IMG/VR virus record: IMGVR_UViG_3300020154_000003 | Location: 124,001-188,000 of that record | Reading direction: 5' to 3' (one strand) | Length of the DNA stretch: 64,000 nucleotides | Part shown: positions 1,659 through 60,581 of the stretch, piece after piece | Numbering within the stretch: position 1 is the first letter of the stretch | Layout of the letters: each line of letters opens with the position of its first letter | The notes under the pieces: generated by a model | The model's database searches: none | Told to the model about the DNA's origin: nothing | The model's input: only the letters and a program-made list of their open reading frames with translations | Made by a program: the position numbers and the translations under genes

Positions 1659-1677
1659 CTCAATAAAATAAAAAGTT

Positions 1678-30523: not shown

Positions 30524-32487
30524 TTCATTTCAGTGTACTTAAAAGAAATCAATGCAAGTAAAGCACCACGCTTAAACCAAAACTTACTGTGCTTTGTAGG
30601 TGCATAGGTACGCTTTACTTTAGCATTCATTTCCATAGTCGATAGTACTGGCCGCAAAGCAAACAAGTGTCAAGCGGCTTCGTTTATATTTTTTTATAAA
30701 TTTTTTCAAAAACCCGCTTCTCAATACTCATAAAGAATATCTCCCTGCGTACAACCAGTACCAGATTAGATAATATTCGTTTAACCGTTTTCATTTTCTG
30801 TGGTGTTTATTTGCCTTACAAAATCCATAGCCTTCTTCGTTTCCTCCACAATGTACTTCTCACTCACTGGCCCTATGGTTATACTCATGCCCGGACGCAA
30901 TAAAGGTGCCTCGATCTTAATTATATATGGGGTATTCTTAACTGTCTTTGCCATGTTTTTATTTATTCAATTCAATCTCCTGTTTTTCAAGCAAACCCAA
31001 ACCCCTCATAAAATCCTGCTTCGCTTCATCAAAATATCTGGTGGCAGATTCACCATACTCATACCCAAGCAATGTACAAAGGTATCTGGCTGCATCCACA
31101 CTGTTACCCTCAAGTTCAATGTCCCCACCCGAACTATCCTTAAACACCAAGCTGAAATATACCAACTTGTCGTTCGCCTTGTCATCATCCTCATTCACAG
31201 GATGACCAACCTGAATGGCACATTCCCTCCTAAAGAAATTCAACACATCCCTCTTATAATACTCCGCTTTCAAATATTTCATATCCAGTACCTTTGTTTA
31301 TTTTCTAAACTTCCAACTATCATTTATGCCAGACCAATTACTGGCCCGCGATAACTCCATCTGATTTCCAATCTCACGCGACTCGTAATAAAACTGAACG
31401 TCCCTGCGATCCTGAGCACTCAAACTCGCCAGTACCTTCTTCGCTCTGGCAATACGCTCTTCATTCTCACGCTTCATGCGTTCACGCCATTGCTCAACCG
31501 TCTCTTCCATATCCAGTACTGGTTTATTTTATCGTTTTCTTCTGTCAGACCAACCTTCAAATGTCCAAACAGGTAAGGACGTATCCTTCTCAGGTAAAGC
31601 CAGTACCCGTTCCAAATCACTCTGACCGTCCGACCTTTTCTCTAACTGGCTTTCAGCCAAATATCCCCAAATGTGACCTGTCTTTTCTTCCATCACAAAA
31701 GGTACATACCAGCCCCTGTGGTCACCGTCCAGACATGCGTTGCACATTACTCGCTCCTGTCTGAAGAACTCGCCATACGGCCTGTATAAGCGAACCTGCG
31801 TGTCCTTGCAACCGTGACAGATATATTTTGCCATATCAAGTACTGGTTTAAGCTTTGTATCTGCAAACTTCCTGCGAAGTAAGAACCTTATTCAAAAGCT
31901 TCTCCTTCAATTCCATAAGATTCATACGCTCCTTGCGCAATGCATCTTCATCTGCCTGCAACTCTTCCAGCTTTTTCCAAACGTGCTTGTTTGTTGCTAT
32001 GGTGAAAACACCAGCACCTCCAAAGACCACAAGAAACCCTGCAACAACAAGCGCAGGCAAAATAAAGCCCCAATTCAAGGATACAAAGTCGATTGGCTTC
32101 TGTGACCAAATACTGATCGCCACAACAGCTATAAACATGGTGGCGATAATAGACATCGTGGCACAAATTTTATAAAGCGTTCTCATTTTTATTATTTATT
32201 TAACAGTAATTGAAACCTTTCTCCAATCTGTCTCAGTGACAGAACATGACCAGTTGGCATCTTCTATGATATTGCTCCCGATCATGTCGCAAAGAAATAG
32301 GTACACAATGGGCCTATCAGAATAATCTGCCAGATAATTCTCCAACCCTCCAGTTTCCCTGTCAAAAGCTTCCTTGAGACCATTCTCTCTGGCCAATTCA
32401 ACAATGGTAGTGTAAACCTTGGGCTTTAATGTGACCTTTTTCATTTTGTTGCGTTTATTCTATTATACGCAGAAAAATGTATATTGT

Positions 32488-33579
32488 TTAGGATTTTGTA
32501 ACCGTAAGGGTAACCTTATGGGATTGCATCACATTGAACTCACGCTCAATTACTTTGTACCTTTTTTCACCAACGTTGATCACATCACCCTTGTTTGGTA
32601 CAACATCAGCAATATATTCAACGATGGGAGAATCACTACTGCTATCCAAATAACCCCTTACCGTGATGTTGAACATCCCCGGTCTACGAGCCTTGAAATC
32701 CATATCCTCCTTGGTGATGAAATTAACTTTCTCACGATTCAAATGGCTGGATGGCATCTCATGATTGATCACAGGTTGATCAGTACCAATACGCCCAATC
32801 TTGCTCCTGTATTCAGGAGAAGTATACGCTTTGACAGCTTGGTCAGCATCCAGACAATTCACGCCCGGAATAGGTTTCATATCGTAAGACACCTTCCTTG
32901 AAACCTGTAAATCAACCCCCGAATCAGGATGGAATTCACCATACAGGGAATTCTTCTCAGATTTTAATCCAGTACCATCCGCTTTTTGAGGAATTTCCAC
33001 GATCTCGATCTTGGGTGTGGAACGCAAGAAGTTAGCAACCTCCTTGGAGAATTCCGGGGTACGCTCAGGTTCCTTGTAAACAAGTTCCTGAAACTTAAGA
33101 CTCTGCAGCGAACTGTGCAAAATGTGGGTCAGTACCTGAAGACCAGTACCTGCCTTCCCAACAATGGCAACTTGGAATTTGTCATCGACCTTTTTCATGG
33201 TTGAAATTATTTCGGGTAAAAGATGATTATTATAATAGTTTTCAGCACCCTCTAACGCATCATGAATGGTTGCGTACTTGTGCTGGACTGTGGTAGCCCC
33301 GTTAAGGTGAGATTCGCTTTTGGGATGCGTGATCTGATAGCCCCACATCGGATTGCCAGTACTAGTAGAAAAATCCTCATAGATCACAGAAACCAGATGG
33401 TCATCCAAAAACCCGACTTTAGCATAATCAGGTACTGGCCTGAATACAGCCTTGGCATTGCGATAATTCCTTTCAGCTTCCTGCCTTGCTTCGGTTATGC
33501 TGGTTCCATATTGGATTCTGACCTTATTATTCATCTTGTTTTGTTTGTAATCGTGATAATGTTTCTGCGTGTAAGGCAT
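32488..33579 (-). CDS. hypothetical protein
   Basis: 363-aa ORF downstream of an AAC-N16-CGTATA motif (~33605-33630). Confidence 0.7.
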   Translation of the reverse strand: MPYTQKHYHDYKQNKMNNKVRIQYGTSITEARQEAERNYRNAKAVFRPVPDYAKVGFLDDHLVSVIYEDFSTSTGNPMWGYQITHPKSESHLNGATTVQHKYATIHDALEGAENYYNNHLLPEIISTMKKVDDKFQVAIVGKAGTGLQVLTHILHSSLQSLKFQELVYKEPERTPEFSKEVANFLRSTPKIEIVEIPQKADGTGLKSEKNSLYGEFHPDSGVDLQVSRKVSYDMKPIPGVNCLDADQAVKAYTSPEYRSKIGRIGTDQPVINHEMPSSHLNREKVNFITKEDMDFKARRPGMFNITVRGYLDSSSDSPIVEYIADVVPNKGDVINVGEKRYKVIEREFNVMQSHKVTLTVTKS

Positions 33580-34562: not shown

Positions 34563-34970
34563 TTTGTTTCGTTGTTTATACTAAGTTAAACGGGAATTCT
34601 TAATTAAGGTTACAGTATATCCGCTTTTTCTTTGTAGCATTTTTCAGCATACTGAATTGCCTCAAAGTCATCGTTGGCCACAACCAGCCCATGAGTTTCC
34701 CCGAAACTTGTTAGCCAAAAGTATAAGGTTGCCTTTACCTTTCCAACCAGACAAGGGTAAATTCCTGCTTCAGTTGGCACAGGTTCAGCGATACTGAAAA
34801 TATCGTATCCGTTTTCACTCTCCAATTTGCCGTGCAGGTAAGTGAAAGGAATGCGTTTGGAAGGGAAGTCGAAACGTTGCTTTCCTAAAACTGATTCGGG
34901 GTTGATCCTAAGTGTTTCCATATCTCATTAAACGTCAAATAGTTAATTAAGGTTACACAAAAGTAATAAA

Positions 34971-34993
34971 AAAAAGGGACTTTTTTAAGTCCC
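34971..34993 (-). terminator. intrinsic terminator; GGGAC/GTCCC family also near 38363, 38825, 39171 and 40581
   Basis: Hairpin adjacent to an A run on the + strand (U tail on the - strand). Confidence 0.7.
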
Positions 34994-34999
34994 GTATTT

Positions 35000-35884
35000 T
35001 TATGCTGCTTCAACCGTTTCGGTTTCTTTGGTCAACTTTTTGTCGAACAGTTGCAGGATGTTCGCATAGATTTTATTGTCGGCTTCCATGCGTAACTTTT
35101 GCGAAAGGTCTGCTTCACAATTTTCCAAGATAAAGTTCATGGAATTGTAAAGTATCCAAAGGTTCAAGTCACATTCAAACACGTCCATTTCATACTCAAT
35201 CCGTTGAATCGTTTCGTCAATCGACTTGAGCGGGAAGTGAGTTCCTTTGACAAGGTTGCGAATTAATTTTTCAATTTTCGCAGACGTTGGCTTTTCAATG
35301 GTCACGGCTTTCATAAGGTTGATCTGATTTTCAACCGTCTCAAAATTCGTGATATAGTTATCAATGTGGGTTGAAACCTCTTCCATTGAATAAATCGCTG
35401 AGTTGCTATGTTTGAATTCATACACGAAAGAAAGACCTTTCAGGTACGTTGAGAACGTTACAGATACACGTCCCTTTTCGTCAACCATATAGCGAACCAG
35501 CCCACCGATTGCTTGTGCTTTGATTTTTCCATCGTAAGAATTCACGAAAGAAACGGCAGGCAGAATGATTTCAGATTTCGGGCTGACAGTCGGGATAGTC
35601 GGAGTAACGTTCACGAAAAATTGTGCATCTTTCGTTGACTTTACGCGAGTCTCAAAACCTTTGAATTTCTTTTCCAGTACTGGCATAAGAGGTTCGAGCA
35701 CGGCACTGTTTTCAACCAGCTTGTAAACGTCTGAACAAAAGTTCAGGGCTTTTTTACGTTTACCGATACGACCAACAATGGCGTAAGCGTTTTCGCTATT
35801 CACTTCCATTGTCGCATCTTTGAAGAGTTCCACAGTCGCCTCTTTTGTGACAGGGAAACAGATAGCTTTAATTTCGGGATGCAT
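35000..35884 (-). CDS. DUF932-like protein
   Basis: CSDVYKLVEN...NSYDG...F.H...NLW.LYN. Confidence 0.6.
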   Translation of the reverse strand: MHPEIKAICFPVTKEATVELFKDATMEVNSENAYAIVGRIGKRKKALNFCSDVYKLVENSAVLEPLMPVLEKKFKGFETRVKSTKDAQFFVNVTPTIPTVSPKSEIILPAVSFVNSYDGKIKAQAIGGLVRYMVDEKGRVSVTFSTYLKGLSFVYEFKHSNSAIYSMEEVSTHIDNYITNFETVENQINLMKAVTIEKPTSAKIEKLIRNLVKGTHFPLKSIDETIQRIEYEMDVFECDLNLWILYNSMNFILENCEADLSQKLRMEADNKIYANILQLFDKKLTKETETVEAA

Positions 35885-36471
35885 ATTTTTGGTTGTTTGT
35901 TATATCCTATTATACGTACTTAATTCAGAAAGGTTGCCTTAATTTAGAATATTTTTCTTAATTCCCTGCTAGGTACTGGCACGTATCCGGTGAATTCATA
36001 AACCTCCACTATCCTGCCAGCCGTATTGTATTTGACAAATAGCGACCTGTTTTGAGTGTATTCCCTTTTAATGAGTTCAAACACTTTTACGACTGCTAAT
36101 TGAGCACGGACTAAAGTATAGTCGGGATTGCCTAAAATATCGTTGACAGTTTTCATATTAGAATACATAACAGTTCAGTTCATACTTTACTTTCATGCCA
36201 TAGACTTGAACGGCAAGGGCTTTCTTTGACTCTTTGCCATCTTTCAGAAGGGCAATTATATAGCGATTAGTTATTCCCTCAGAAGGTCTTTTTGGCCCTA
36301 CTGTGACCTTATTAAACCAGTCCGTTTCGTCAATGGTGAAACCTTTGGAGGTTGCAACGCGAACGGCCTCTGCCATTGCTGAGGTAAAAGAGTCGTGATA
36401 TAGTTGAAAGTTCATGTGAGTATTAACGTAGTTAATTAAGAAAGGTTGCACTAAATTAAGAAAAAAGCCCG

Positions 36472-36798
36472 TTAATTTACGGGCTGTTCATTTGCAATGC
36501 GAGTCAATTGCTTTGCGTATTTCATGATTTTCTTTTTGGCCATTGCCAGTTGCTTTGCAGTCATGAAACCCTTTTCAATATACCACTTTGCAAATTTAGT
36601 CATGATAAACGCATCCGTACCGTTGAAACCTACTCCATTGTTGTGAGCAGTCGAATCGGAATTCTTTTCGTCTTCCGTTTGACGTTCATAGATTTTCACT
36701 ACCGAACGCATAACAAATTTGTCATCGTTTTCGAGCAGCAATTTGATTTGTTCAACTTGCCAGACTCTTTTTTTGGTTGCTATGATCGTTGTTTCCAT
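36472..36798 (-). CDS. conserved phage hypothetical protein
   Basis: IYERQTEDEK...HNNGVGF..D...KYAKQL. Confidence 0.7.
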   Translation of the reverse strand: METTIIATKKRVWQVEQIKLLLENDDKFVMRSVVKIYERQTEDEKNSDSTAHNNGVGFNGTDAFIMTKFAKWYIEKGFMTAKQLAMAKKKIMKYAKQLTRIANEQPVN

Positions 36799-37311
36799 AC
36801 TGAGTTAAACGGACTTAATTAAGAAAGGTTGCGTTAATTAAGAAATATTTTTCCAGTACTGGTAAAAAAAATAAAAAGTAGGTTGGAGTACACTCTCTCG
36901 AAAACATTGACGTTTTCCACCCATCTTAACATATTGCAGGTTCGATAAGTATATTAACGGCAATACTTAATTAAGGTTGCGTAAAAGCTAAATTATTTTC
37001 GAATTATTTTGGAGGTCTGACAGACCAGTTCAGTTCCCCGTTGTGGATGTAGTAACCAAACTGTTTAAATTTATCCGGGCTGTTCAGTGTAACCCTGATA
37101 ATAAAATCATGTTTCTCCTTTTCGCTCCATTGTTGTGGCATTGTTTGGCTTTCCCTATGTTCCGGGAAGTCGCACCAAAGATTTACAAGGGTATGCATAA
37201 AATGGTCAGTGCTTACCACAAAGTTTGCAAAAGTTAAAATGTGTGCTTTCATATACTGAGTTAAACGGGTAAACTTAATTAAGGTTACATAAAAAGAAAA
37301 AAATCCCTGAT

Positions 37312-38181
37312 TTATTCAGGGACTGACATATAAACGTCTTCCATTATACTATGAGTGTAACCACGTCTAAGGGTATAATTTGGTACTTCATTCTTACCGA
37401 TTAGCACGGCTTTCCAAGTGATATTCCCCTCTGAATCTTTGTAAAGTTTCACGTCCATACCGTCAAAATAATTTGCAAGTTCTTGAGCGGGATTGTTAGT
37501 ACAAAACTCTTCAAAGAATGCGTAAAAGTCACAAAGGGTATTTCTGTTTTCCAAAGTATCGGGAATCATTTTTGCAGCCATACGGTAACCGTATCTATGG
37601 AGGTCAGCAATTTTGCGGAAACTCACAGACTTTTTATAATCTTCCCCGTATTGTCTTTCATCTTCATAGTTAGTATCGGGTGAAAATTGTTTCACCTTAT
37701 TCCAGTACTCAGATATTTGATCTTCCAAGTCATAGTCATTTGTCGGACGTTGTTTCGGTACGTTGCTTTCCAGCGTTGAACCAAACTGAGTATTCCCGCA
37801 TTCAATAGATTCTTGAATCATGTCTTGAGTCGTTAACCTCATTAGTTCAGCATTTGAATAGCGATAGTTACGACCTTGCAGCCTATTCCATACTCCGAGC
37901 GTATTGATATAATACCACATTGCGCCCATTGCAGCCATTTCGCCCCCTACATTCATTGCATAGTCCCCGCGAAAGTATTTGTTTGAATATTCATGACTAT
38001 GTTCAAACACGTCATGAAAAATTCCAGTACCACCCCAAAATGCATTGAATGACGAACCTGAATGGTTATTGTCATAGGTATCTTTGTGCGCTAAACCATA
38101 TTCACCAGTTGCATCGTCACAAAAGAACGTCAATTCGACTTTTTTAACTAACCGTTTCATATTCTTTGTTGTTGTGTTCAT
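37312..38181 (-). CDS. hypothetical protein, possible HD/HExxH-like metal site
   Basis: FHDVFEH...GGEMAAMGA. Confidence 0.7.
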   Translation of the reverse strand: MNTTTKNMKRLVKKVELTFFCDDATGEYGLAHKDTYDNNHSGSSFNAFWGGTGIFHDVFEHSHEYSNKYFRGDYAMNVGGEMAAMGAMWYYINTLGVWNRLQGRNYRYSNAELMRLTTQDMIQESIECGNTQFGSTLESNVPKQRPTNDYDLEDQISEYWNKVKQFSPDTNYEDERQYGEDYKKSVSFRKIADLHRYGYRMAAKMIPDTLENRNTLCDFYAFFEEFCTNNPAQELANYFDGMDVKLYKDSEGNITWKAVLIGKNEVPNYTLRRGYTHSIMEDVYMSVPE

Positions 38182-39188
38182 GAGTATATTAACGGACTTA
38201 ATTAAGAAAGGTTGCCTTAATTAAGATTTTTTTTGAATTATTTCACCAGTACTGGTAAAAAAAAGAGGGCGTGTTGGAGTATACTCGGTGCCGTTTTTAA
38301 GAAACGTTACAAGTATATTAACGGGCAAACCTTAATTAAGGTTACACAAAAGATGAAAAAAAGAGGGACTTTTTTTGTCCCTCCCTTTCGTGTTAACTGA
38401 TTGCACTTTCCGGGCATCCCTCTGCTTTCATTGCCATTTCCTTGGCAGCTTTCAGGGATTGAGCGGTGACCTTTAAAACCTTTGTCCCGTTGTCATGTTT
38501 CAATCTGAGTGCAAAGGTTGTCATTCTTAAGTGTCGAGGCAATTTCATGCGTTTTGTGGGTTACGTAAAAGATTCATTTCGATAACTTTTTCACGGCATT
38601 GTCTACAGCTAGGCAAACTTAATGCCTGCCCCATAAATGTGGGAACCAGATTCAAACTACCTTTACCACCGTTCCATAGTCCTTTCCCGCAAAGGGTAGA
38701 GCCGTGCTGGAATTGTGTCAATCCTTCCCGACTTGCGGGCATGTGAGTAAGATCGTTTAAGTTCGTTGTCATATGTATACTAACGGGCATCCTTAATTAA
38801 GGTTACACAAAAAGGATAAAAAAAAGGGACTTTTTTTCAAGTCCCCTAATTTTCAGGCTGTTAGCAGATGTGCCACTTTGAACTTTGTCACCGTGTCGTT
38901 GAAGTCGTCAGCGAGGTTGTTTTCCTCATAGGTACGTTTCAGTTCTGCCAGTACCTTGAGATTCGATGCACCTTTGGGCAGTCCCACCAGTCTCTTAAAT
39001 TGAGCCTTTACAGGGGCAGCATTTCTGGCGATAGGCATTCCGAATTTAATTTCGGTAATGATCGACATAAGGAGGACTTTTAGAGTGAATGAATTCATAT
39101 TGTTTTTTGTTTTGTTATATGAGTTATAACGGCATTCCTTAATTAAGGTTACACAAAACGAGAAAAAAAAGGGACTTTTTTCAGTCCC

Positions 39189-39551
39189 TTAAATTTTGAT
39201 CGCTTTGTTGGTTACATGTGGCTTATTCCATTTCCCTATGTGGATGTTATAGTAATAATTCGGGATATTACCATAGTCGCCATCGGTTGAAACCGTTCTG
39301 CTTTTTGCGCTGATTATTTCAGCGATTGACAAAAGGAATTCAAGATAAGGCTTTCCCGCATGATGTTCTTTTATGTACATCGGGATAGGATTGAGTTGCA
39401 TGTAATTTTCGGGAAACTCAAAAGGGCTTTCCATTACCGCGACCTCAATGGTCGAAAGGTGTTGGCGTGTTATGCTAAATTTCACATTCGGATATTTAGC
39501 TTTGATCTTTGCCCTCATTTCCTGAACGGTCTCGGTTGTGATATAACTCAT
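39189..39551 (-). CDS. LPD29-like protein
   Basis: R.KIK.KYP.VKFSI...H...YY.NIHIGKWNKP. Confidence 0.55.
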   Translation of the reverse strand: MSYITTETVQEMRAKIKAKYPNVKFSITRQHLSTIEVAVMESPFEFPENYMQLNPIPMYIKEHHAGKPYLEFLLSIAEIISAKSRTVSTDGDYGNIPNYYYNIHIGKWNKPHVTNKAIKI

Positions 39552-39729
39552 AACTTTAACGGTTATAAAGTGAAAGTAAGTAAAAACTGGTTAACACCAA
39601 AAAAACGAAGATGTTTATTATTATGCGTTTCATGAGTATATTAACGGGCAAACGTTAATTAAGGTTACAAAAAAAAATATTTTATTTTTTCGTGAATAAT
39701 GTAACCTTTGTGAATAGTTCACGTTAATA

Positions 39730-39813
39730 TACATACGAACGCTGACAAGCTAGTAGGAGAGCCGAAAAGAAGGAAAAGGAGAGAACGGTTTCTGCAGCCA
39801 TCCGTTCTTTTTT
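39730..39813 (+). ncRNA. candidate small RNA copy 1
   Basis: Promoter at 39701-39727, no ORF, terminal hairpin GAACGG/CCGTTC plus T run. Confidence 0.55.
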
Positions 39814-41091
39814 AAAAAAAAGAGAAACAAAAAAAGGGGATTATTCTCCCCTTGCTTCTTTGTCAAGTTGTTCTTTCAGGTCTTGTTCGTGCTGTTTTTC
39901 AGCCTCGATGTCCAAAAGTTCCTCAACTTGCTGCTCGATAATAAAATCCGGGATTTCGTCTTCCATTGCTTTTTATTTAAGTTGTGGGTATCTCCATAGA
40001 GTATCTTTCACCGTGCGGTTGTTAACTATGACTTTCGTTTCATCCATGATGCAGGAAAGTTCACAGTTCCCGAAGTAGGATGTTTGAGCGTTTTTCTTTG
40101 CTTGTTTCAAAGAATTGCCCCAACCTTCCCGGACTGAATAACCTGATTGTTTCAGGCCATTTTTTTCGCAAAGTACCCTTTCCATTGCATCAGCTAAAAA
40201 GAATTCGACCAATAGAAAGTAGCAGGCGTTTCGTGTTGTTGTGTGTCTCATGAGTATATTAACGGGGATTGTTAATTAAGGTTGCGTGAAAAGAAAAAAT
40301 ATTTTTTGTAACCTTTGTTGCATTGTTCCCGTTAACAATGCCAAACAACGAAAAACTATGAAATTTTATGGCTATGTTCCCACAAAAGAGGGGAAAGAAC
40401 CTTTAGGGACTGAAGGGCGCACAATGTTTGAACTTGAAACAGTTCCGGGCGCAATTCGAAAGATGAGACGGTATGCCAGTACTGTGAATTCTCCTAAACT
40501 TTCCGCTCCATCATTTAAGCTATTCAGCTATTCTAATTTTTACGATCAATCAACTTTTACTGAAATTATTTAAAAGGAAAGGGACTATTTTTTAGTCCTT
40601 TTTAGTCCCTTTTTTTGCCTTTACCCTTGCGTAATTTCCGCTACTCTTATAGTATGTTCCCACATACGTTAGGCCATTCACTGCCTTTATTGTGACTGCC
40701 TGTCGCTTGTCACCAAAGTTTGATCGCCATTCCCTGCCAAGTACCACTACTCCTAATTTGTCGCCTGTCCAAGTTGTGGCGTATGTCATCGGAGTTCCTT
40801 CAGTGATATACAGGAAATAATTCTCAGGCTTATCGTGCATGAATTCGTAGCACTCAACCAGACTGCGAAGATCGTTTGTAACAATGTCCGCATGAGGGAA
40901 TGTCGCACAGATTTCAGCAGGGATGCCATTGGTCTTGTGCAATGTACGGTACTCTAAAGATGCTGCATCGTATTCAGCGATTTTCATCTTGTAGATTGCG
41001 TAATGTTCAGCGTTCATATCGTGTTTGTTTTGTTGTTAAGTATATTAACGGACAATGTACGTAAAGGTTACATAAAATGTTATATTATTTT

Positions 41092-41196
41092 AGGACAATG
41101 TTCACCGTGCCAGTACTGGTATAGGACAATGTACGTGCTGGTTAATTAAGGATAGGACAATGTACGCTGGCAGGGCATGAGGGAAGGACAATGTAC
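41092..41196 (+). repeat. four AGGACAATGT(A/T)C repeats at an exact 31-bp period
   Basis: GG starts at 41093, 41124, 41155 and 41186; a fifth copy at 41050. Confidence 0.85.
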
Positions 41197-41259
41197 ATAA
41201 AATAAAAAAAGGGGGTTAACAACTCCCCCTTTTGAACACAAAACAACAAAACAACAATG

Positions 41260-47260: not shown

Positions 47261-47284
47261 ACTATTGATGGCAAATATAGGAGG

Positions 47285-48282: not shown

Positions 48283-48356
48283 TACATACGAATCAAGTAG
48301 GAGAGCCGAAAAAAAGGAAATTAGAAAACGGTTATTGCAGGGGTCTGTCTTGTTTA
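48283..48356 (+). ncRNA. candidate small RNA copy 3
   Basis: Promoter at 48254-48280; same conserved blocks as copies 1 and 2. Confidence 0.55.
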
Positions 48357-48474
48357 ACTTATGCCAGTACTGGAAAAAATATTTAAACTATTTTCGTGAA
48401 AAACGTAACCTTTGTACAAAAGTCAACGTATAAAGAGCATACGCAAACAACAAACAAAACAAACTTTACTAGCT

Positions 48475-51267: not shown

Positions 51268-51355
51268 TTCGAAACAATTTTCTTAACTTTCGCAACCTTT
51301 ACGTACAATGTACGTTAGTATACATAAAAGAAAATAACTTTAACTAACCACTCTT

Positions 51356-51919
51356 ATGAAATCCAGCAAAGTTGTCATCCTTGAGATCAATGCAATTTAC
51401 AAAGCTTTCAAGCCTGCGATCACGAAGTACGTGAATCTCAAGATCAGGGATAAGATGATTGCTGAAGAACTCATCAATGACGTGTTCGTTAAAGTTCACA
51501 CATCTCTCCGCACCTACGATTCGAAGAAAGCACAATTTAATACTTGGATATTCAACATCGCCAAGAATGTGCTGATCGACCACTTCAGAAAGAAGTCGCT
51601 CGAAACCACCTCTCTGGAAGTTTCCAAACAGGATGACTCTGAAGACACAATGTCTGAGACTCTGCCCGTGGCTACCCCGGATCGGAACCCCCTTGAATCC
51701 ATGATCAGCGATGAAACAATGTACAATGTACAAACCGCTATGGGCCACCTCAATGAGACTCAACGTGAAATGCTCACAATGTACGCTCTGGATAACCTGA
51801 CCTACGAAGAGATCGCAGCCATGCTCAACATGCCTATGGGTACTGTCAAAGGCACGATCTTTAACGCTCGTACCAGACTGAAAGAAATCCTTGGCAACCG
51901 TATACCAGTACTGGCATGA
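51356..51919 (+). CDS. ECF-type RNA polymerase sigma factor
   Basis: Region 2 AEELINDVFVKV...FNTWIFNIAKNVLIDHFRK; region 4 LTYEEIAAMLNMPMGTVKGTIFNARTRLK. Confidence 0.93.
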   Translation: MKSSKVVILEINAIYKAFKPAITKYVNLKIRDKMIAEELINDVFVKVHTSLRTYDSKKAQFNTWIFNIAKNVLIDHFRKKSLETTSLEVSKQDDSEDTMSETLPVATPDRNPLESMISDETMYNVQTAMGHLNETQREMLTMYALDNLTYEEIAAMLNMPMGTVKGTIFNARTRLKEILGNRIPVLA

Positions 51920-54694
51920 ATAATATAGCACAACCTGAAGACATGTTGAAGTGTAGCGATTGTAAGACAATCTACGATCCTCTGCTCAACAAAAGATGTC
52001 CCTGCTGTGGGAATAACCAGCGATTTCTTAATAGCGTTATTGAAGGGCTGGATGATGAGTCCAACTTCATTGGCGAGGATGATGACCATTAATTAAGGAA
52101 ACCATGTTACAAGCATTCTTAGCACAAACCGCACAAGATTACGATCTGCCAGTACATATCGTGCAACAGATTTGGGAGAAGTATGAAGGTACTGGATTGT
52201 TTTACGATAAATTGGAAGAATATCTCAAAAGTCGTAACCTTTGTAACTAGTTCTCGTTAACATACTCATATGGACTCACCCAAAGAAATTGTAGTAAGCG
52301 TCAAGACGAAACACACCTACAAGGTAGGGGAAGACCGTCTGGAACTCGACACACCTCTGACTGTCGATATGAAGAAATATAAAAAGACAGGGGAAAATAA
52401 CCACTTCATCTTCTATACCAGAAAGTCTTCCAAATGAATAAGCATCTCATCAACACGGGAACCCCGAAGTCAGCCCAACAAGCTTATAACAAACTTGCAA
52501 GCTTTCTTCATAAGAATTCTCAAGGGATCAATGATCCTGACACAGCCTTCCTGAAGCACCAGAAAGTATTATCAGTACTGGTTGGGAGGTACACGCCCGC
52601 TATCGATATGATGATCAGGGTCTGGTATAACGTGGAAGACTTCGTGGCTGATGGCGAACCTATGGATCAGGTATGGGCTGACATCGAAGACATGTGCAAT
52701 TAAACCAGTACTGGATATGAATAAGAAAGATATAAAAGTAGCTTGCTGGCTCAAGAATGGTACTGAATGGTATTATCCGGTAAAGACTATCGACTTGAGC
52801 GAATACGATCACGTTCAACTCCTAATCAAGGATGACCATTCAGGTGACATTTACATTGCTTGGAATGGTGATTCTGATGCTCAGAAACATGCCACAGGTA
52901 GACTCTTCAAATCAAAATAAACCAGTACTGGTATGACATCATTATCCGAACAACAACTCAATGACGTTTTGGAACATCTCAAAGAAAAACTTGAGGTAAA
53001 AGTCAAGACCAAAAGAGACGAAGGTTATCTCGCAGTAAGGGTTGAACTCTATTTGGATGGCGAAGTCATCGCTGCTGATGAGGACTCAGCCAGAGTGGAT
53101 TACTAAATTAAGGATCGGACAATGTACAAGACACCCACAATAGTCGAACAATTGGATCGAATAGGAGAGGATATATTGCGAGTACTGGCCGAAGAGAAGA
53201 CCCCTATGACTGTCTTTCAACTACACGTCTTGAGAGATAAGGAAAAATGCGATCTCTCATCCTATGGCTGGTCATTCGCCCTCGATAGACTCGAAAGAAA
53301 ACATCTGGTAGAATTCGTATCACCATGCCACTGGCAACTCAAAGATCAATCCCGCACAATGTACATAAGAGAACTCGAAGATTTATTGGATAAAAGAATA
53401 ACCCCCGACTAATGAAATATTTCAGGATCACCAGCAAAAAAACCAGTACTGGTGAAGTTCACTATTACATCGAAGCAAAAAGGAAATGGTATCACTTCTG
53501 GAAACTGCAGGGTGTATATGCAACCCATAAGATCGCTGCAGGAGTACTGGAGAAGCTGCTGGCTCAACCCCTTAATTAAGTAAACTGTACAATGTACGAT
53601 GAATAAGAACGTCAAAATCTATAAGCGAGACGAAATCCAAAAGGTCTATCATCAACACGCTTACCATTGTGGTTCCGTGCTCTATTCCAATGATGGCTAT
53701 ACGTGGCAGTCAGTACCGATGGATTCCGGGAAATGGGATATTCACAAATGGTCATTCGCCTTCATTGAACGGCCAAAAACCAGTACCGTGACATCGCTGC
53801 AGAGATTCCAGAATTATGTCTATAAGAATATCTGTGGGGCATATACCCCGGAGAAGCGACTGAAATCAATCGAAACATTGTACAGTAAAATTAATGGAAA
53901 TTGATCCTGAATTCATGAACAAGTTAATACTTTTGACGTATAATTGATCACATATGAACTCTCCAATCATTTCAGTTAAACCAGTACGAGGCAGCAAAGG
54001 AAAGCTTGAAGTCTTCCCCCAACACCTCTTCGTAAAGAATTGGGTCTTCAATGAAGACGAAAAGGATGAGGCAGCACTCGCCCATTACATCGCTGCAGTA
54101 GCTGAAAAGAATGGTATGTCAGCAAATGAAGTATACCAAATATTCCCTGCCATGCTCCGTATGCTCAGAAGCAATATCGATTGGGCTAACCCCAATAAGA
54201 TCACTCAAGCTGATCTCGATAAGGCAAATGAAAAAGGAATGATGTCCAAATAAACCAGTACTGGATAATGACAACAACCATCGAGAAACTCAGAGACCTG
54301 ACCGTGGAGCAACTACTCATCCTGTCAAACGAACTTTGTCAAACGACAGTACCTGAAGACGCTCTTATCCGGGAAGTGATCAAAGATACCCAACTAGACA
54401 CACTAACTCCGGGTCTGGCTTTCATTGGCTTGGCAGGCCATCTACATGTGGAAATGGCTGAACGTCTTAAACTCTTGACCAGTACTGGACAAATATCTTC
54501 CCCGGATGATACCTTAGAAAGATTGAACCCGAAAGGAAAAATGATCCTCTAATCAGTAATTATGAATATGGAATTCCGATTCGTCCTCATGGTGCCTTGC
54601 CCTAATTGCCATATCCAAATAAGCTGCATGGCCAGTACTTGCACCCATTGCAAAACCAAAGTGAGCAATCACAATTAAAAACCAGTACTGGACA

Positions 54695-55199: not shown

Positions 55200-55970
55200 T
55201 GTTTAAGTGAAAAATCTAGTCCCAATTGGTTTAATGGCCCCAAGTTAAGAAATTTTATATACCCTCCAAATCACTGACGGTACAATGTACGTTCCCGCTC
55301 GGTAATATTTACCCCTCTCCAGTACTGGCCTATACCAAATGTTCCCGCACGGTAATATATAAATCCCACAACACCATATCCTAATACCAGTACTGGCCCC
55401 TGTCAATATCAACCCCGTTTTGACAGATCGTACAATGTACTGTCAATCTTAATTAAGACTACCCCACAATGTACGGTGATAAACCAGTACCTGTATAATA
55501 AACCTCCCTAGTTTATTATCCGAGATCAGGTTTATTATATGCAATCACATATAATGTACGCCTCTCCAGTACTGGTTATATGCATTCACATATAATTCCC
55601 GTTCATGGCCCATGAACATGTAAACTTCGTGAACAGAAATTTACCAGTACTGGTTCCTGAATTAAGTATCCAGTACCTAATTAAGTATTCGAGTATTAAT
55701 TAAGGTACAGTAAAAAACAGGTACTGGCAGCAGGATACCGCGAAGAAAACGCCCATTCTGGTACTGGTTTCCACTTTTGGTACTTATAAATTTTTATAAA
55801 ACAGGATTCCCAAAATGGTACTGGTCTTAAATCGAGACATGTGGGGCATACATAAACGCTAAAATTTACGTATATGGGTTAAAAATCGCAATATCCAGTA
55901 CTTGAGTAAGATACAAAAGTACGTATACCCCCCCTATTAAGGTACAATTAAAATGGGGTTAAAAACCAGT
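55200..55970. repeat. repeat-dense non-coding region (origin/terminus-like)
   Basis: Four CCAGTACTGG, three ACAATGTAC, several TTAATTAA-like sites; direct repeats GTTCCCGCWCGGTAATAT (55291, 55341) and TTATATGCAWTCACATATAAT. Confidence 0.65.
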
Positions 55971-56611
55971 ACTACTTAACTTGTAAATGTTCGATATAGG
56001 ATTTCATCATTGCGTGAACAATGGAATTAAACATTTCTATTATTGTCTTATTATCAAATTCTTTAATCCTCAACTTAGGATTTTTACGGTTTAATTTCAT
56101 TCTGACGTATAGATCGAATCTATCCCAATCATTCTGTATAGTCTCAGGTAAATGCTTTTTAAAAACATTCAATCTCGACTTTATATATTGATGAACAGAC
56201 TTTACTTTATCGTAATGGCTCTCTGATGAAGCAGCCACTCCCATAAGACCATGAAAAAATACTTCAAATAAAATATAGGTATCGGTTACGTGAGTAGGAT
56301 ATTCTTCTTCCATAACTTATATTTAGGTGGTTTAATTATCTGATCCTAATCTTTTAATGCCAAGGAATTCGATCCATTCATTATAATAGGTCTGACCGAA
56401 TGTTGGAATATATCCTAATCTATGGCAAGTCTGTATTAATAATTCCTTATTTTCAATACGTACTGGAAAGCCATTATTCATAATGACCTGATCACCACGT
56501 TCCAGTTTTTCAAGGAGTCTACCATATTCGACACCATAGGTGAAGGATTGCGATGCATCGGGGAAGGAGATGAATAATTCCATTGGTTATAGGATAAAGT
56601 AAAGTGGGTGA

Positions 56612-57208: not shown

Positions 57209-57819
57209 TCCAGTACTATTTAGGAATATAACTGATGGTTGAGATAAAGGAATTCGGATAGGGTTGCATCGTATGCTTTATAGTCTTTATTCATTCTATT
57301 ACACTGGTCATATACGTGAGTGGCAAAATCGTTGGAATTGATAAGTTCTTGGTACACTACTTTTCTTGATAATATATCGATAATCTTCACCAATCTTGAT
57401 GGTATGATTAATTTGGGGATGGTATGTTCAGTATGTGGTTCCACCTTTATTTTCCCATAAAATAAGGCTTCTTCAACTAAGTATTTTCCCATATCAGTAC
57501 CTTGATTTTTTTATTGGGAGTTGACATATTCGAGTACTATTTTTTGGTAAGCTTCGTATTCATCATTAAGCATGATACATCTATCAAGAATATAGGATGC
57601 GGGTTCACAACTTTGGGTTATGTTTACCGTATGCACAGGGGTTTTAGGGTTGAATCTATCCATAATTCTCATTATACGACAGGGTATTGGATCGAGATCA
57701 TATATTCTTCCTTGGGATGCTATTTTAGGAGGATCGGAGAATGCTAAGAGTTCATCAATATAGTATCGATCATTTTTATCGCTGCGTAATGCAGGTATGT
57801 TATTCATACCAGTACTGGT

Positions 57820-58245
57820 TTAAAACAATTCCAGTTTACTAGTGATTTCATCTACTTCATCTGACCATGCAGGCCCGATTGCGCAGCAGGTGATGGTTGG
57901 TACGCCATTAAACTCGGTCAGTCCTGCATCTTTAATTAAGGAACATGGTAATCCTTTCTGTCTTGCAGCCCCATAGAGTGCCATAATTTCTTCTTCGGTT
58001 TCGACCACACAGCAGATTTTGGTGAAGATACCTGTAATCCAGTTATGTATTGCACTTTCTTTATCCAAGGTCAATACCAAATTATCCCAATCATTAGCAC
58101 CTTTTACAAATTCACCAGAGTCAAGAATTGCCTTCAGGGATGCATGGGCACCTTGGCCGATATACTTTCCTTTTCTTGGGGTGACTTTCTTTCCATCGAC
58201 AACGAAGGATTTACGCATCACTATGACTTGTTTGCTTACTTTCAT
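57820..58245 (-). CDS. pth2: peptidyl-tRNA hydrolase Pth2
   Basis: KQVIVMRK...KGK..GQGAHAS...TKI...DAGLTEF...T.TCCAIGP...VDEITSKLEL. Confidence 0.9.
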   Translation of the reverse strand: MKVSKQVIVMRKSFVVDGKKVTPRKGKYIGQGAHASLKAILDSGEFVKGANDWDNLVLTLDKESAIHNWITGIFTKICCVVETEEEIMALYGAARQKGLPCSLIKDAGLTEFNGVPTITCCAIGPAWSDEVDEITSKLELF

Positions 58246-60581
58246 ATGAATGTCTTTAGTTCTCTCATGTAATTCAATTTATTCACCTTCTTTGCCTTCT
58301 CATCTATAAACTCATCAACTGGCAACACGTAAACAATATATTCATCCCCCTTTTTAATGAATTTCAAAATATTGTATTTAGACTTACGGATAAGTATGAT
58401 GTTTCGTTTTTCAATAAACTCTTTAAAACTGGTGATAAGGTATCTTGCCCACGAATTATCTTTTTTTGGATGTTTATCTTTCCAATATAGATGACCTGTT
58501 TTAAAATCATAATAGGATAATGTTATTTTATCCATCATGTGCTTCAAATACTATATATCCTTTGGGGAGGTCGGAGTTGAATTCTTTCCAATCCCACCAC
58601 CCTTCGGTTTTTGTTTTCTTATAGGTGCCACTGGCTGAATGATAAGAAATCCAATTAGAATTAATCTCACAAACATCATTCAAGGGATCATAATTAACAC
58701 CTTTGATCAGGCTATGTGCTGGTATTGGGGTTTGGTGTTCGATGCCGTGTTGGACATAAAAATCGTCACCCTCGCGATAGTCTTTATAAAGGTTTTCGAA
58801 ATAAGTTCGCATAGCTTGAAAAGCTTCTTCCATTGAATCAGCCACGACAATCCACATCACTACTTCGTAGCTACCGAATACCTTTTGGAATATGAAGGTT
58901 TTATTCATTTACAAATTAAGGTTTATTCACTTTATTATGCAATTCCACGATCTGCAGTTTCAGCAATTCGACTTCCAGTTCTTCTTTTGTGAGGTTTACC
59001 ACAGCTACGGTAAATCCGGTATGATGTGAGGTATTATCCATACTCAGGCTCCATACGCCATACTTCATCCCATGACGTTCTTCTTCATGGTACTGGTAAT
59101 TAAAGTAAGAACTATTGTCATAAAATTTTTCCTTTGTGGAATAAGATCGTTCTTGTGCATCTGCGGTTCTTGGTTTAATCTCACAGTTAGCCAGTACTGT
59201 GAAAATGGCTATGAGTATAATTATCTTTTTCATTCTTCAGGTATGGATTTTAATTCAATAGTAAATTTCAGGGTTTTGATGTCGTAGCCACGTTCTTCCA
59301 GTTCTTTAAGGAAGTTTTCCATCTTATATGGTGGACGGTGGTTATATTTGTTTTCACTCCATTTGGTGTAGTCGAAGATCATCCTGTCACTGAGTAGCAT
59401 ATAATGGACGAGTGCGCCATCACATCTTCGTGGGTAGTGTATCATCAGATCATTCTCCCGTTTGCTCCATTTGACTGCCAGTACTGTGTCTTTCATCTTA
59501 ATTTAGGGCAGTAACTCGCCTCAAGTATGTGTTATATTCCTCATTCAGGACTTTACAGCGTTTGTCCATTTCAGTTTCAATCTTAATTACAAATTCAATT
59601 ATGGATGAACCTGTGACTTCGCCATCTTGAATTTCTTCGACTATTTGATTATTCTTATGTCTGTCAACCACACAATAATATTTTCCATCACGGGGATCAA
59701 CATCTACAGCATATCGTTCCATCAGGTATTAATTTGATCAATGAGCAGTTTCACGTAATGGAGAGCATTCTTTTTATTGGGTTTCAAGCTGGAATGCCAA
59801 GTCATTTGATCTCCATCGTAGACCACTGTGATTATGTAGTTGTACTTTTTGTAATTGAGGTTATTGTCTTTCCATATGTGAGGACGTGTTGTCCACAGTA
59901 CGTAGCCATTATCGAGATTGAATTGAACTGATTTTATTTTCATCTTAGCCCTTATGTTTTCTCATGATGGCCAGTACTGCTTCACCGAACGCAATTAATT
60001 CACGTTCCTTTACGACTATAGCTTCAACACCACGTTCTTCCCAAATGGCCAGTCGTTCTCTCCTGCGGGCTTGTACTCGTTCATACTGTTCGATAGTATA
60101 ACCCTCTTCAATAATGTCTTTGGCTGCTTCTTCTGGATTTCTCATTTATCTGTGTTTATACCTCACCTTCGAATCGTATCGCCTGCTTAGGTCTGCATAA
60201 TCCACATCATTGAAGTTCTCAGATGCCTCACCATCAGTGAAGGCAATGATCAGGTTATCATCATTAAAACCTTGGGCAGATGTAAAGAATACGTCTTTGA
60301 TGTCTTTCTTGATACCTTTGTGGATAGCAAATTTAGCATCACGTTTTATCCACCATGTAAATTCGGTATGGCCGCTCATGATTTTTCAGGGATTAGTTCA
60401 TCCAGATAAGTGAGGGAAGTGCAGTTATCACAGCAGATTACCACAGCCTGTTTCTCTTGTTGCGTATCGTCCTCAACGTATTTGCTTATTTTATAATTGA
60501 AGAACTTATTACTTCCACATATTCCGCAGATGATATGTATTCGTGGATTAGCAATTGCCATCGCCAGTACTGGTTAATATT

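What the first reader, a model, noticed from the sequence alone, without database searches (positions are those of the whole stretch)
31513..60573. Palindrome CCAGTACTGG is highly over-represented and often sits between a stop and the next start codon
Seen: 21 perfect copies by eye (31513, 35674, 36853, 38246, 41110, 44273, 45052, 48364, 51905, 52705, 52922, 53443, 54255, 54479, 54682, 55319, 55387, 55566, 55644, 57809, 60564), many near-matches, and none noticed in the first 31 kb; less than one is expected by chance. Several form TAA-A-CCAGTACTGG-(1-3 nt)-ATG junctions (52701-52719, 52918-52935, 54251-54270, and on the minus strand at 57809); others lie just before a start codon (31513, 60564) or inside CDSs. 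Inference: a binding site for a dimeric phage protein (parS/nucleoid-like or repressor), or a recombination junction by which gene cassettes are added.
Basis: partly seen in the sequence, partly recalled or inferred. Interest (0 to 1): 0.75.

Follow-up and report, generated by a model that had tools for sequence, protein, structure and literature searches.

The report
Palindromic site family in jumbo-phage promoters
An exact 10-base palindrome repeated about 20 times in one 29-kb stretch of a soil jumbo phage is real, is conserved in its close relatives, and most likely is the docking site of an unidentified two-part DNA-binding regulator of the phage's own sigma-factor promoters, while also marking the seams where small genes are swapped.

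Summary
There are 21 exact CCAGTACTGG in the window (0.05 expected) and 26 in the 366-kb genome, and 21 of them lie in 29 kb. The genome is an uncultured soil T4-superfamily jumbo myovirus without Shine-Dalgarno signals and purged of short palindromes. The word is private to one sub-lineage: G001 has 44 copies, five further contigs have 2-16 copies each, and 16 other clade genomes have 0-2. The host region is a hyperplastic block of small ORFs with about 35 terminator/promoter cassettes that match ECF-sigma promoters (AAC, 16-17 nt, CGT). The phage encodes an ECF-type sigma factor inside the cluster. Of 113 copies in seven genomes, 22 fill the spacer of such promoters, 16 sit 0-3 nt before an ATG (in G000 P=6e-9), and non-coding hubs hold 4-12 copies. 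Sigma's own gene or promoter carries the word. Homology between relatives breaks at these sites, but also at other motifs. Best reading, at confidence 0.45: an operator for an unidentified dimeric DNA-binding regulator of the phage sigma regulon, which also acts as a PeSL-like recombination seam. No reader protein was found, and there is no ParB. Rivals are a dedicated recombination site, RNA pairing between copies, and a spacer selectivity element.

The parts
31513..60573 (.). Cluster of 21 exact CCAGTACTGG copies, at 31513, 35674, 36853, 38246, 41110, 44273, 45052, 48364, 51905, 52705, 52922, 53443, 54255, 54479, 54682, 55319, 55387, 55566, 55644, 57809 and 60564.
   Evidence: 21 of the genome's 26 copies lie here. 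The syntenic cluster in G001 has about 30 of its 44 copies.
34611..52265 (.). Zone of about 35 PeSL-like cassettes on both strands. Each has an optional hairpin plus T-run, an A/T-rich tract, gtAACCTT(T/A), about 14 nt, C(C)GTTAATATAC, a C/A-rich leader and ATG. This is read as ECF-sigma-type promoters (-35 AAC, 16-17 nt, -10 CGT).
   Evidence: The consensus is compared with PMC5758882. Nine cassettes have an upstream hairpin plus T5 run.
45039..45068 (-). The one G000 cassette with the palindrome in its spacer: AACCTTT-CCAGTACTGG-TTCGTTAATTAAC. It is preceded by a terminator hairpin and followed by the ATG at 45035.
   Evidence: The same architecture recurs in G001 (9-10 times), L432 (2), L433 (4) and L434 (6).
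51356..51919 (+). ECF-type sigma factor gene (187 aa). Its last codons CCA GTA CTG GCA TGA contain the palindrome at 51905. Its own promoter cassette (51294-51323) carries ACAATGTAC in the spacer.
   Evidence: (Sigma70_r2 7.6e-13, r4_2 2.8e-14, Sigma70_ECF). Orthologues are present in G001 and L431-L433 and L435.
52705..52931 (+). Two junction copies (52705, 52922) that flank one small cistron (52717-52920). Each fills the whole gap between a TAA stop and the next ATG.
   Evidence: As RNA the two copies are predicted to pair with each other with P about 0.99.
54255..54691 (+). A junction copy at 54255 (TAA-A-pal-ATA-ATG), an in-ORF copy at 54479, and a copy at 54682 fused to an ACAATGTAC word whose ATG is the start codon.
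55277..55972 (.). Non-coding hub between convergent gene blocks. It holds 4 exact copies, about 8 degenerate or half copies (CCAGTACCTG, CAGGTACTGG, CTGGTACTGG, ATGGTACTGG, CCAGTACTTG, CCAGTACTAC) and 4 ACAATGTAC words.
   Evidence: It has no Rfam match. It is partly conserved in L435, and G001 has an analogous hub at 252.5-253.7 kb with 7 copies.
41052..41196 (+). Iteron-like array of 5 GGACAATGT(A/T)C words at 31-bp spacing, enclosing the palindrome at 41110. This is a second GTAC-based site family confined to the same region.
57809..57818 (-). Junction copy between the PTH2 peptidyl-tRNA hydrolase gene (57820-58245) and the next gene (57511-57807): TAA-A-pal-T-ATG.
31513..31522 (-). Junction copy 2 nt before the ATG of ORF 31298-31510.
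60564..60573 (-). Junction copy 2 nt before the ATG of ORF 60376-60561.
49290..49535 (+). 81-aa helical protein. It is the only cluster protein whose presence tracks palindrome-rich genomes. It is a weak candidate reader or sigma modulator of unknown function.
   Evidence: There is no DNA-binding signature.

Best explanation
CCAGTACTGG is the recognition site (operator) of an unidentified homodimeric, sequence-specific double-stranded-DNA-binding regulator. The regulator may be encoded by the phage or by the host. It acts on the hyperplastic early/middle region of this jumbo phage. That region is transcribed from about 35 cassettes that have the architecture of ECF-sigma promoters, and the phage encodes the matching small sigma factor inside the cluster. 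Where the site lies in the 16-17-nt spacer between the -35 AAC and the -10 CGT, a bound dimer would compete with sigma-RNA polymerase, or reshape the spacer as MerR-type activators do. This would define a sub-regulon that includes the sigma gene or operon itself. Copies squeezed into stop-start gaps, copies inside ORFs and the multi-copy non-coding hubs would be further binding sites (roadblocks, cooperative looping anchors or a titration sink). They are placed where a gene-dense genome without Shine-Dalgarno sequences can tolerate 10 extra bases. Because identical words sit at module edges, they also serve as points of exchange between relatives, as PeSL cassettes do in other T4-type phages. 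What is shown: the statistics, the lineage conservation, the positions, the sigma gene and the promoter architecture. What is inferred: that the sigma factor uses these cassettes, that a protein binds the palindrome, and the sign of the regulation.
For: 1) The enrichment is regional: 21 copies against 0.05 expected, and 21 of 26 genomic copies in 29 kb. 2) The word is conserved across diverged relatives while the surrounding genes are not. G001 (capsid 86% identical) has 44 copies, about 30 of them in the syntenic 22 kb, yet only about 20 small ORFs are shared. Contigs L431-L435, with GC from 28.7% to 39.9%, have 5, 2, 16, 16 and 4 copies. Sixteen other clade genomes have 0-2. 3) 22 of 113 copies lie in the spacer of AACCTT...CGT cassettes in five genomes. 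The AAC-to-CGT distance stays at 16-17 nt while the site's offset shifts by 0-4 nt. 4) The sigma factor is confirmed, and the cassette matches the ECF consensus of an AAC -35, a CGTA-type -10 and a 14-17 bp spacer (PMC5758882). 5) The sigma link: G001's sigma gene is driven by a palindrome-bearing cassette. In G000, L433 and L435 the sigma gene ends CCA GTA CTG GCn. The wobble base outside the word varies (A/G/T), and the three wobble bases inside it are fixed. 6) Near-copies vary almost only at the outer two positions. 7) A second word (ACAATGTAC) occupies the same spacer position in other cassettes, as expected for alternative operators. 8) No local RNA hairpin forms, and spacer copies lie upstream of the inferred start site, so a DNA-level reader covers all contexts. 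9) The genome otherwise lacks many 5-6-bp palindromes, so this one is retained by selection.
Against: No reader was found. G000 has no HTH_3, HTH_17, RHH_1, MerR_1 or ParB_N in six frames. About 45 cluster or lineage-restricted proteins gave no DNA-binding domain. The only protein that tracks the word (81 aa) looks like a plain helical protein. Perfect copies outnumber one-mismatch copies (21 to 15 in the cluster), which is unusual for operators. G000 has only one promoter-spacer copy but eight copies at a fixed 1-3 nt from ATG, a register that matters for RNA and not obviously for DNA binding. Transcription start sites and timing are unknown. The assignment of the cassettes to the phage sigma factor is by consensus only.
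Confidence: 0.45

Rival explanations
1. Recombination seam or gene-cassette junction. The identical 10-mers are primarily sites at which small ORF modules are inserted, deleted or exchanged. This could happen by microhomology or homologous recombination, as for PeSLs, or by a site-specific nuclease or recombinase that cuts in the palindrome and regenerates it on rejoining.
For: Related soil strains lose homology with G000 right at palindrome junctions: behind 52719, before 54268, and where 52098-52235 is replaced by 35 nt containing a new copy. In G000 against L435, homology stops at the shared copy at the sigma 3' end, and the G000-only segment 53430-55280 is bounded by copies at 53443 and 55319. 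The region is hyperplastic. Exactness of the copies would follow from cut-and-rejoin. There is a PeSL precedent in T4-type phages (PMC2839356, PMC4122927).
Against: Another G000-only segment (49520-50321) is bounded by ACAATGTAC elements and not by palindromes. Breakpoints at gene ends are expected anyway. 10 bp is short for homologous exchange. No recombinase or nuclease was identified. The model does not explain the placement inside promoter spacers, the hubs with many degenerate copies, or the conserved copy inside the sigma and DUF932 genes. It may be a secondary consequence rather than the function.
Confidence: 0.2
2. RNA-level element. On polycistronic mRNAs, any two copies of the self-complementary 10-mer pair with each other. 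This loops out the cistrons between them and buries the start codons that lie 1-3 nt downstream. Translation would be gated in a phage that has no Shine-Dalgarno sequences, or the duplex would mark a processing site.
For: There is a fixed 1-3 nt distance to ATG in 8 G000 copies (P=6e-9), and similar junction copies occur in G001, L431 and L433. The duplex energy is -16.6 kcal/mol, and the pairing probability is 0.99 for 52705 x 52922 and 0.91 for 51905 x 54682 in the operon transcript. The model needs exact palindromes and several copies per transcription unit, and both are observed. There are no SD signals.
Against: 22 copies lie in promoter spacers, upstream of the inferred start site. The hubs lie between convergent blocks. 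Minus-strand copies are 1-4 kb apart and separated by terminators and promoters. There is no local structure. One-mismatch variants show no bias towards G-U-compatible changes. 10 bp is short for RNase III. Pairing of any self-complementary word is a thermodynamic truism.
Confidence: 0.12
3. Protein-independent spacer element. The palindrome in the spacer tunes promoter strength or selectivity between the phage's two small sigma factors through DNA shape, and the other copies are by-products of cassette turnover.
For: Spacer sequence modulates ECF-sigma selectivity in B. subtilis (PMC5758882). G000 has a second small sigma gene at 300.8 kb. Distinct spacer words define promoter subclasses.
Against: The offset within the spacer varies by 0-4 nt. 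Most G000 copies are not in promoters. The hubs and junction copies remain unexplained. Perfect dyad symmetry is not needed for a shape effect.
Confidence: 0.08
4. Centromere-like or domain-organising sites (of the parS/KorB or matS type) that compact, position or silence the hyperplastic region.
For: Dozens of exact palindromes are confined to one 22-29 kb domain with multi-copy hubs. The sites occur in promoters, in genes and between convergent genes, as I recall for the KorB operators of plasmid RK2 (from memory, not checked).
Against: There is no ParB_N domain and no partition ATPase was noticed. A lytic T4-like phage has no known need for partition. The promoter-spacer register points to transcription.
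Confidence: 0.07
5. Chance, codon bias or recent duplication of one segment.
For: The half-site CCAGTAC is moderately over-represented genome-wide. The 5 copies outside the cluster are all in frame CCA GTA CTG G. The G001 spacer copies share a 35-bp cassette.
Against: Shuffles give 0.05 copies. Flanks of the G000 copies are unrelated. The word is conserved in genomes with 29-40% GC while the genes turn over.
Confidence: 0.01

Closest known systems
PeSL cassettes (promoter-early stem-loop) of T4-type phages (Arbiol et al. 2010, PMC2839356; Comeau et al. 2014, PMC4122927)
   Same: Both are short composite terminator plus promoter repeats, concentrated in hyperplastic regions of small ORFans of T4-superfamily phages. 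They flank variable genes and coincide with exchange points between relatives.
   Different: PeSL promoters are sigma-70 consensus early promoters. Here the cassettes look like ECF-sigma promoters, and the phage brings its own sigma factor. The 10-bp palindrome is an extra, separable module that also occurs outside cassettes, at stop-start gaps and in hubs. Mini-circles were not tested.
ECF-sigma promoters and autoregulated ECF sigma operons (e.g. B. subtilis SigW: tGAAAC ... CGTA; PMC5758882)
   Same: A -35 AAC, a T-rich tract after it, a 16-17-nt spacer and a -10 CGT(A/T). The sigma gene is preceded by its own cassette.
   Different: The sigma factor is phage-encoded and no anti-sigma was recognised. 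A dyad-symmetric word or a second word occupies the spacer of promoter subsets, which is not a described feature of ECF promoters.
Operators lying between or over the -35 and -10 elements (classical repressors; MerR-type activators that bind a dyad in the spacer). Established knowledge, not tested here.
   Same: A perfect dyad sits in the promoter spacer and would overlap the polymerase footprint.
   Different: 10 bp without a central spacer is short. No MerR, HTH_3 or RHH protein is encoded. Many copies are not in promoters.
Multi-operator global regulators of mobile elements (KorB operators of RK2; dispersed C1 operators of phage P1). Recalled from memory.
   Same: One exact word occurs at many places in a replicon: in promoters, far from promoters and inside genes.
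   Different: There is no ParB-family protein here. The sites are confined to one 8% segment of the genome.
Interspersed 5 x 22-bp arrays with core GACCAGTACTGGTC in Porphyromonas pasteri and related Porphyromonadaceae (found here)
   Same: The same 10-12-bp palindrome, repeated in intergenic DNA.
   Different: They are chromosomal and lie in an oral bacterium with 50-59% GC. They have a rigid 22-bp phasing and form one long hairpin. They were found in essentially one species. The shared word is probably a coincidence.

Membership tests
ECF-sigma-dependent promoter (the cassettes that host the palindrome) | -35 element with conserved AAC and a group-specific -10 (often CGT-), separated by a 14-17 bp spacer | tested here: met
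   gtAACCTT, then 13-14 nt, then CGT(A/T)T in about 35 G000 and about 28 G001 cassettes. The AAC-to-CGT distance is 16-17 nt. Consensus from PMC5758882.
ECF-sigma-dependent promoter (the cassettes that host the palindrome) | A cognate group-4 sigma factor (regions 2 and 4 only) is present, usually preceded by its own promoter | tested here: met
   Window 51356-51919 matches Sigma70_r2, r4_2 and Sigma70_ECF. There is a cassette 33 nt upstream of its ATG. Orthologues are present in all relatives examined.
ECF-sigma-dependent promoter (the cassettes that host the palindrome) | Transcription starts a few nt downstream of the -10 element and depends on that sigma factor | not testable with these tools
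   The only RNA-labelled runs are assembled contigs without read ends.
PeSL-type mobile regulatory cassette | Composite of a stem-loop terminator and a promoter, repeated in hyperplastic regions next to ORFans | tested here: met
   Only 9 of the G000 cassettes have a strong hairpin plus T-run.
PeSL-type mobile regulatory cassette | Promoter of host sigma-70 early type | tested here: not met
   Sigma-70-type matches are not enriched: 47 against 54.8 in shuffles. The cassette boxes are AAC/CGT.
PeSL-type mobile regulatory cassette | Indel or replacement breakpoints between close relatives fall in the repeats; mini-circles form | tested here: inconclusive
   Several breakpoints fall at palindromes or at ACAATGTAC elements. 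The sample is small and mini-circles cannot be tested.
Operator of a dimeric DNA-binding regulator | Dyad-symmetric site conserved across relatives, overlapping promoter elements | tested here: met
Operator of a dimeric DNA-binding regulator | An identifiable cognate DNA-binding protein | tested here: not met
   No HTH_3, HTH_17, RHH_1, MerR_1 or ParB_N in six frames. Domain scans of about 45 proteins were negative. A host protein or a novel fold is not excluded.
parS / ParB centromere | A ParB-family (ParB_N) protein encoded with the sites | tested here: not met
   The control genomes scored positive.
Integron-like attC / site-specific cassette system | A tyrosine or serine recombinase, and imperfect-palindrome sites at the 3' end of every cassette | tested here: inconclusive
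   No recombinase was seen among the scanned proteins. Only about half of the junctions in the + operon carry the site. No whole-genome recombinase scan was done.

The most novel reading that the evidence does not exclude
The 10-mer is a dual-use code. As DNA it is bound by a regulator with a new fold, encoded among the ORFans. As RNA, copies on the same polycistronic transcript pair with one another to gate translation of small cistrons in a phage that lacks Shine-Dalgarno sequences. Alternatively, it is the joining site of a dedicated phage gene-cassette system (integron-like, with cut and rejoin at the palindrome) that builds the hyperplastic region.
Probability: 0.15. Interest if true: 0.8.

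Novelty: new variant of a known kind. Interest (0 to 1): 0.5.

Why it matters
Hyperplastic regions of jumbo and T4-like phages hold most of their unknown genes, and how these regions are regulated and reshuffled is poorly understood. This case gives a concrete, testable regulatory grammar for a large uncultured soil clade (at least 168 contigs). The grammar has a phage ECF-type sigma factor, about 35 cognate promoter cassettes, and at least two short GTAC-based words that subdivide them. One of the words is an exact palindrome that selection keeps in a genome otherwise purged of palindromes. The co-location of the sites with mosaic seams links regulation to gene exchange and extends the PeSL concept beyond sigma-70 promoters.

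Tried and rejected
- Megablast and tblastn against named phages found no close relative. The capsid is only 30-40% identical to known phages.
- A 14-mer junction scan of IMG/VR gave mostly single chance hits. It was useful only because it revealed G001.
- G003, a distant jumbo phage with 13 copies, has heterogeneous contexts (CDS, one sigma-70 promoter spacer, one terminator stem). I did not build on it.
- The scan for two palindromes close together retrieved unrelated tandem coding or satellite repeats and a Porphyromonas pasteri repeat family. I judged these coincidental.
- There is no Rfam family in the cluster or in those arrays, and no local RNA hairpin.
It covered ParB_N, HTH_3, HTH_17, RHH_1, MerR_1 and ProQ_C in six frames, Pfam and PHROG scans, and Atlas look-ups of three lineage-restricted proteins.
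- The complex-prediction job (81-aa dimer plus DNA) was not folded by the tool and gives no evidence.
- The DUF932 in-gene copy is conserved in G000, G001 and L434, but the homologues in other relatives are too divergent to separate protein constraint from DNA constraint.
- The anchor-gene search in IMG/VR found only G001.
- An SD-replacement role is rejected because this phage has no SD signal at all.

Full report
OBSERVATION. CCAGTACTGG occurs 21 times in the window, exactly at the listed coordinates. Dinucleotide shuffles give a mean of 0.05 copies. The window is bases 124,001-188,000 of a single 366,038-bp contig with 36.3% GC. Genome-wide there are 26 copies, and 21 of them lie in genome 155.5-184.6 kb. 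The five copies outside the cluster all sit in long ORFs in the frame CCA GTA CTG G. Flanks of the copies are unrelated, so the unit is the 10-mer. One-mismatch copies are about four-fold enriched in the cluster, and 14 of 15 differ only at the two outer positions, so the core AGTACT is fixed. Eight copies lie 1-3 nt upstream of an ATG that opens an ORF of at least 55 codons, and most of these follow a TAA by 0-8 nt. Only 2.1% of positions in the region have that property (P=6e-9).

WHAT THE GENOME IS. It encodes a gp23-like major head protein, a tail sheath, a portal and a baseplate wedge. It also encodes NAMPT, PRPP synthetase, Thg1 and many tRNAs. It is an uncultured T4-superfamily jumbo myovirus from soil, and its capsid is only 30-40% identical to that of any named phage. 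Gene starts show no Shine-Dalgarno signal: GGAG-type words are at background frequency and the upstream region is A-rich. This suggests a Bacteroidota-like host, which is an inference. The genome and its relatives completely lack many short palindromes. GGTACC is 0 against 40 expected and CCWGG is 0 against 252 expected. GGATCC, CAGCTG, CCATGG, GAGCTC, CTCGAG, CGTACG and GATATC are also all 0. An enriched 10-bp palindrome is therefore retained against the genome's general trend.

RELATIVES. IMG/VR contig G001 (371.5 kb, capsid 86% identical) is syntenic with G000 at 64-84% nucleotide identity in conserved genes. It has 44 copies, about 30 of them in 252.5-274.2 kb, the segment syntenic to the G000 cluster. 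That segment hardly aligns. Only about 20 small ORFs are shared, at 33-77% identity and in partly shuffled order. The wider clade has at least 168 capsid relatives, but 16 of its mostly complete genomes carry 0-2 copies. Three of them, read in full, have no equivalent clustered GC-rich palindrome. I anchored on the GP88-like gene (window 48475-49278) to find closer relatives. Five further contigs were obtained. Their anchor identities are 75-89% and their GC ranges from 28.7% to 39.9%. They carry 5, 2, 16, 16 and 4 copies. The word is thus conserved in one sub-lineage across large compositional and gene-content change.

THE CONTEXT THAT EXPLAINS MOST. Both phages carry a dense family of cassettes. 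Each has an optional hairpin plus T-run, an A/T-rich tract, gtAACCTT(T/A), about 14 nt, C(C)GT(A/T)TAATA(T)AC, a C/A-rich leader and ATG. There are about 35 in G000 158.6-176.3 kb and about 28 in G001 254-271 kb. In every relative the operon downstream of the anchor gene encodes a small sigma factor. G000's copy is window 51356-51919, with matches to Sigma70_r2, r4_2 and Sigma70_ECF. The cassette matches ECF-sigma promoters, which have a -35 AAC, a group-specific -10 such as the CGTA of SigW, and 14-17 bp spacers. ECF sigma factors usually drive their own synthesis (PMC5758882). Host sigma-70-type matches are not enriched. I therefore read the cassettes as promoters of the phage sigma factor. 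The architecture and the gene are shown; the assignment is inferred.

WHERE THE PALINDROME SITS. I classified the 113 copies in seven genomes. 22 are in the spacer of such cassettes (G001 9-10, L434 6, L433 4, L432 2, G000 1). 16 are 0-3 nt before an ATG. 6 abut a second word, ACAATGT(A/T)C. 41 are in other intergenic or short-ORF DNA, 27 are in long ORFs, and 1 is at a contig edge. In the spacer class the AAC-to-CGT distance stays at 16-17 nt while the palindrome's offset varies by 0-4 nt. That fits a site overlapping the polymerase footprint rather than a sigma contact. Other cassettes carry CCGGACAATGTACG at the same place. That word is confined to the same region, is always in the sense orientation, and forms a 5-copy array with a 31-bp period around the palindrome at 41110. 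Non-coding hubs concentrate the sites. Window 55277-55972, between convergent blocks, has 4 exact and about 8 degenerate copies. G001 has 7 copies in 1.1 kb. The sigma gene is tied to the word. In G001 its promoter carries the word. In G000, L433 and L435 the gene ends CCA GTA CTG GCn. The wobble base just outside the word varies and the three inside it do not. L435 has another copy at sigma codons 3-6.

MOSAIC SEAMS. Contigs of related soil strains lose homology with G000 just after ...CCAGTACTGGATATG (52719) and just before 54268. At the latter place a different gene end is followed again by the palindrome. The stretch 52098-52235 is replaced by 35 nt holding a new copy. In G000 against L435, homology ends at the shared copy at the sigma 3' end, and a G000-only segment (about 53430-55280) is bounded by copies at 53443 and 55319. 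Another G000-only segment (about 49520-50321) is bounded by ACAATGTAC elements instead. So the palindromes mark seams, as do the other regulatory words. This is the PeSL situation described for T4-type phages (PMC2839356, PMC4122927).

MECHANISM. The reading that covers all contexts with one agent is a dimeric double-stranded-DNA-binding regulator whose operator is the palindrome. Such a regulator would gate a subset of sigma-dependent promoters, including the sigma operon. Extra sites would be packed into the only free DNA of a gene-dense region (the stop-start gaps) and into hubs. The weakness is that no reader was found. There is no ParB_N, HTH_3, HTH_17, RHH_1 or MerR_1 in six frames. No DNA-binding domain appeared in about 45 scanned proteins. 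The only protein whose distribution tracks the word (81 aa, window 49290-49535) has no DNA-binding signature. A host factor or a novel fold remains possible.

RIVALS. (a) A dedicated recombination site is supported by the seams and by the exactness of the copies. It does not explain the spacer placement or the hubs, and it lacks an enzyme. (b) RNA pairing between copies is thermodynamically strong: the duplex energy is -16.6 kcal/mol and the pairing probability is about 0.99 for neighbouring junction copies. It would explain the fixed distance to ATG in an SD-less phage. It cannot explain the copies upstream of start sites, and no local hairpin exists. (c) A spacer selectivity element between the two small phage sigma factors is possible, but it does not explain the non-promoter copies. 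(d) A parS-like role lacks a ParB. (e) Chance is excluded.

SIDE PATHS. The same word in 5 x 22-bp arrays belongs to an interspersed repeat of Porphyromonas pasteri and is probably coincidental. A distant jumbo phage, G003, has 13 copies in mixed contexts. No paper in the library mentions the word in a phage context.

VERDICT. The feature is real and selected. Its two interpretations are each partly right.

Noticed in passing
whole genome G000 (and G001, G010, G013, G006): Extreme avoidance of short palindromes (restriction sites). GGTACC, CCAGG, CCTGG, GGATCC, CAGCTG, CCATGG, GAGCTC, CTCGAG, CGTACG and GATATC all have 0 copies against 40-130 expected. Some avoidances are lineage-specific: CTAG is 0 in G010 and G013; GGCC and CGCG are 0 in G013 and G006; TCCGGA, ACCGGT, GCATGC and GTGCAC are 0 in G000 but normal in G001.
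   Followed up: partly
window 41052-41196, 49541-55475; G001 252.9-262.2 kb: A second GTAC-based, nearly palindromic word, (C)GGACAATGT(A/T)C(G). It is confined to the same region and always in the sense orientation. It occurs in promoter spacers, at gene starts (its ATG is the start codon at 53122 and 54695) and as a 5-copy array with a 31-bp period.
   Followed up: partly
window 1586-1659: A tRNA with anticodon CTA, called tRNA-Pyl by ARAGORN, i.e. an amber-suppressor-like tRNA. It sits next to two tRNA-Ile genes. Whether TAG is recoded in part of the genome was not examined.
   Followed up: no
whole genome G000: There is no Shine-Dalgarno signal upstream of 232 long ORFs. The upstream region is A-rich and cassette leaders are C/A-rich (ACAACAACA). 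This suggests a host with SD-independent initiation, such as Bacteroidota.
   Followed up: partly
G000 genome 300778-300951(-) and 31553-31747(+): Two further sigma-like genes besides the cluster one. One is a second small sigma factor (Sigma70_r2, 1.9e-11). The other is a weak 262-aa match.
   Followed up: no
window 34611-40343 (genome 158.6-164.3 kb): In many G000 cassettes the -35 box is part of a 16-bp palindrome, AACCTTAATTAAGGTT, and some are arranged back to back (162328/162343). CTTAATTAAG occurs 41 times in the genome. G013 has TTTTAATTAAAA 49 times.
   Followed up: partly
window 57820-58245 (-): A phage-encoded PTH2-type peptidyl-tRNA hydrolase (5.6e-24), shared with G001 but not detected in three other clade genomes.
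   Followed up: no
window 51916-52092 (+): A 58-aa Cys-rich (CxxC...CxCC, zinc-ribbon-like) peptide whose ATG overlaps the sigma stop codon (ATGA). It is not conserved in the relatives, which have unrelated small genes there.
   Followed up: partly
window 18455-21601: A divergent pair of large genes (336 aa and 672 aa) shared only with G001. They have no Pfam or PHROG match.
   Followed up: no
G001 whole genome: Another highly repeated word, TCACATGCTGAAGG (41-49 copies), is private to G001. G010 has GAAAGGTAGTCACAAC 16 times. Each clade member has its own repertoire of repeated words.
   Followed up: no
loci L284-L402, L436-L492: An interspersed intergenic repeat in Porphyromonas pasteri (about 45 loci) and related MAGs. 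It consists of five 22-bp units with core GACCAGTACTGGTC and folds as one long hairpin (z = -8.5). It is not in Rfam.
   Followed up: partly
L431 13433-13798, L432 12719-13045: Relatives encode a Phage_ProQ_C_like (RNA-chaperone-like) protein in the sigma operon. G000 has none.
   Followed up: partly
G003 (IMG/VR contig of 348,532 bp): A distantly related T4-like jumbo phage has 13 copies of the same palindrome. One lies in the spacer of a TTGACA-N17-CATAAT promoter and one forms a terminator stem.
   Followed up: partly
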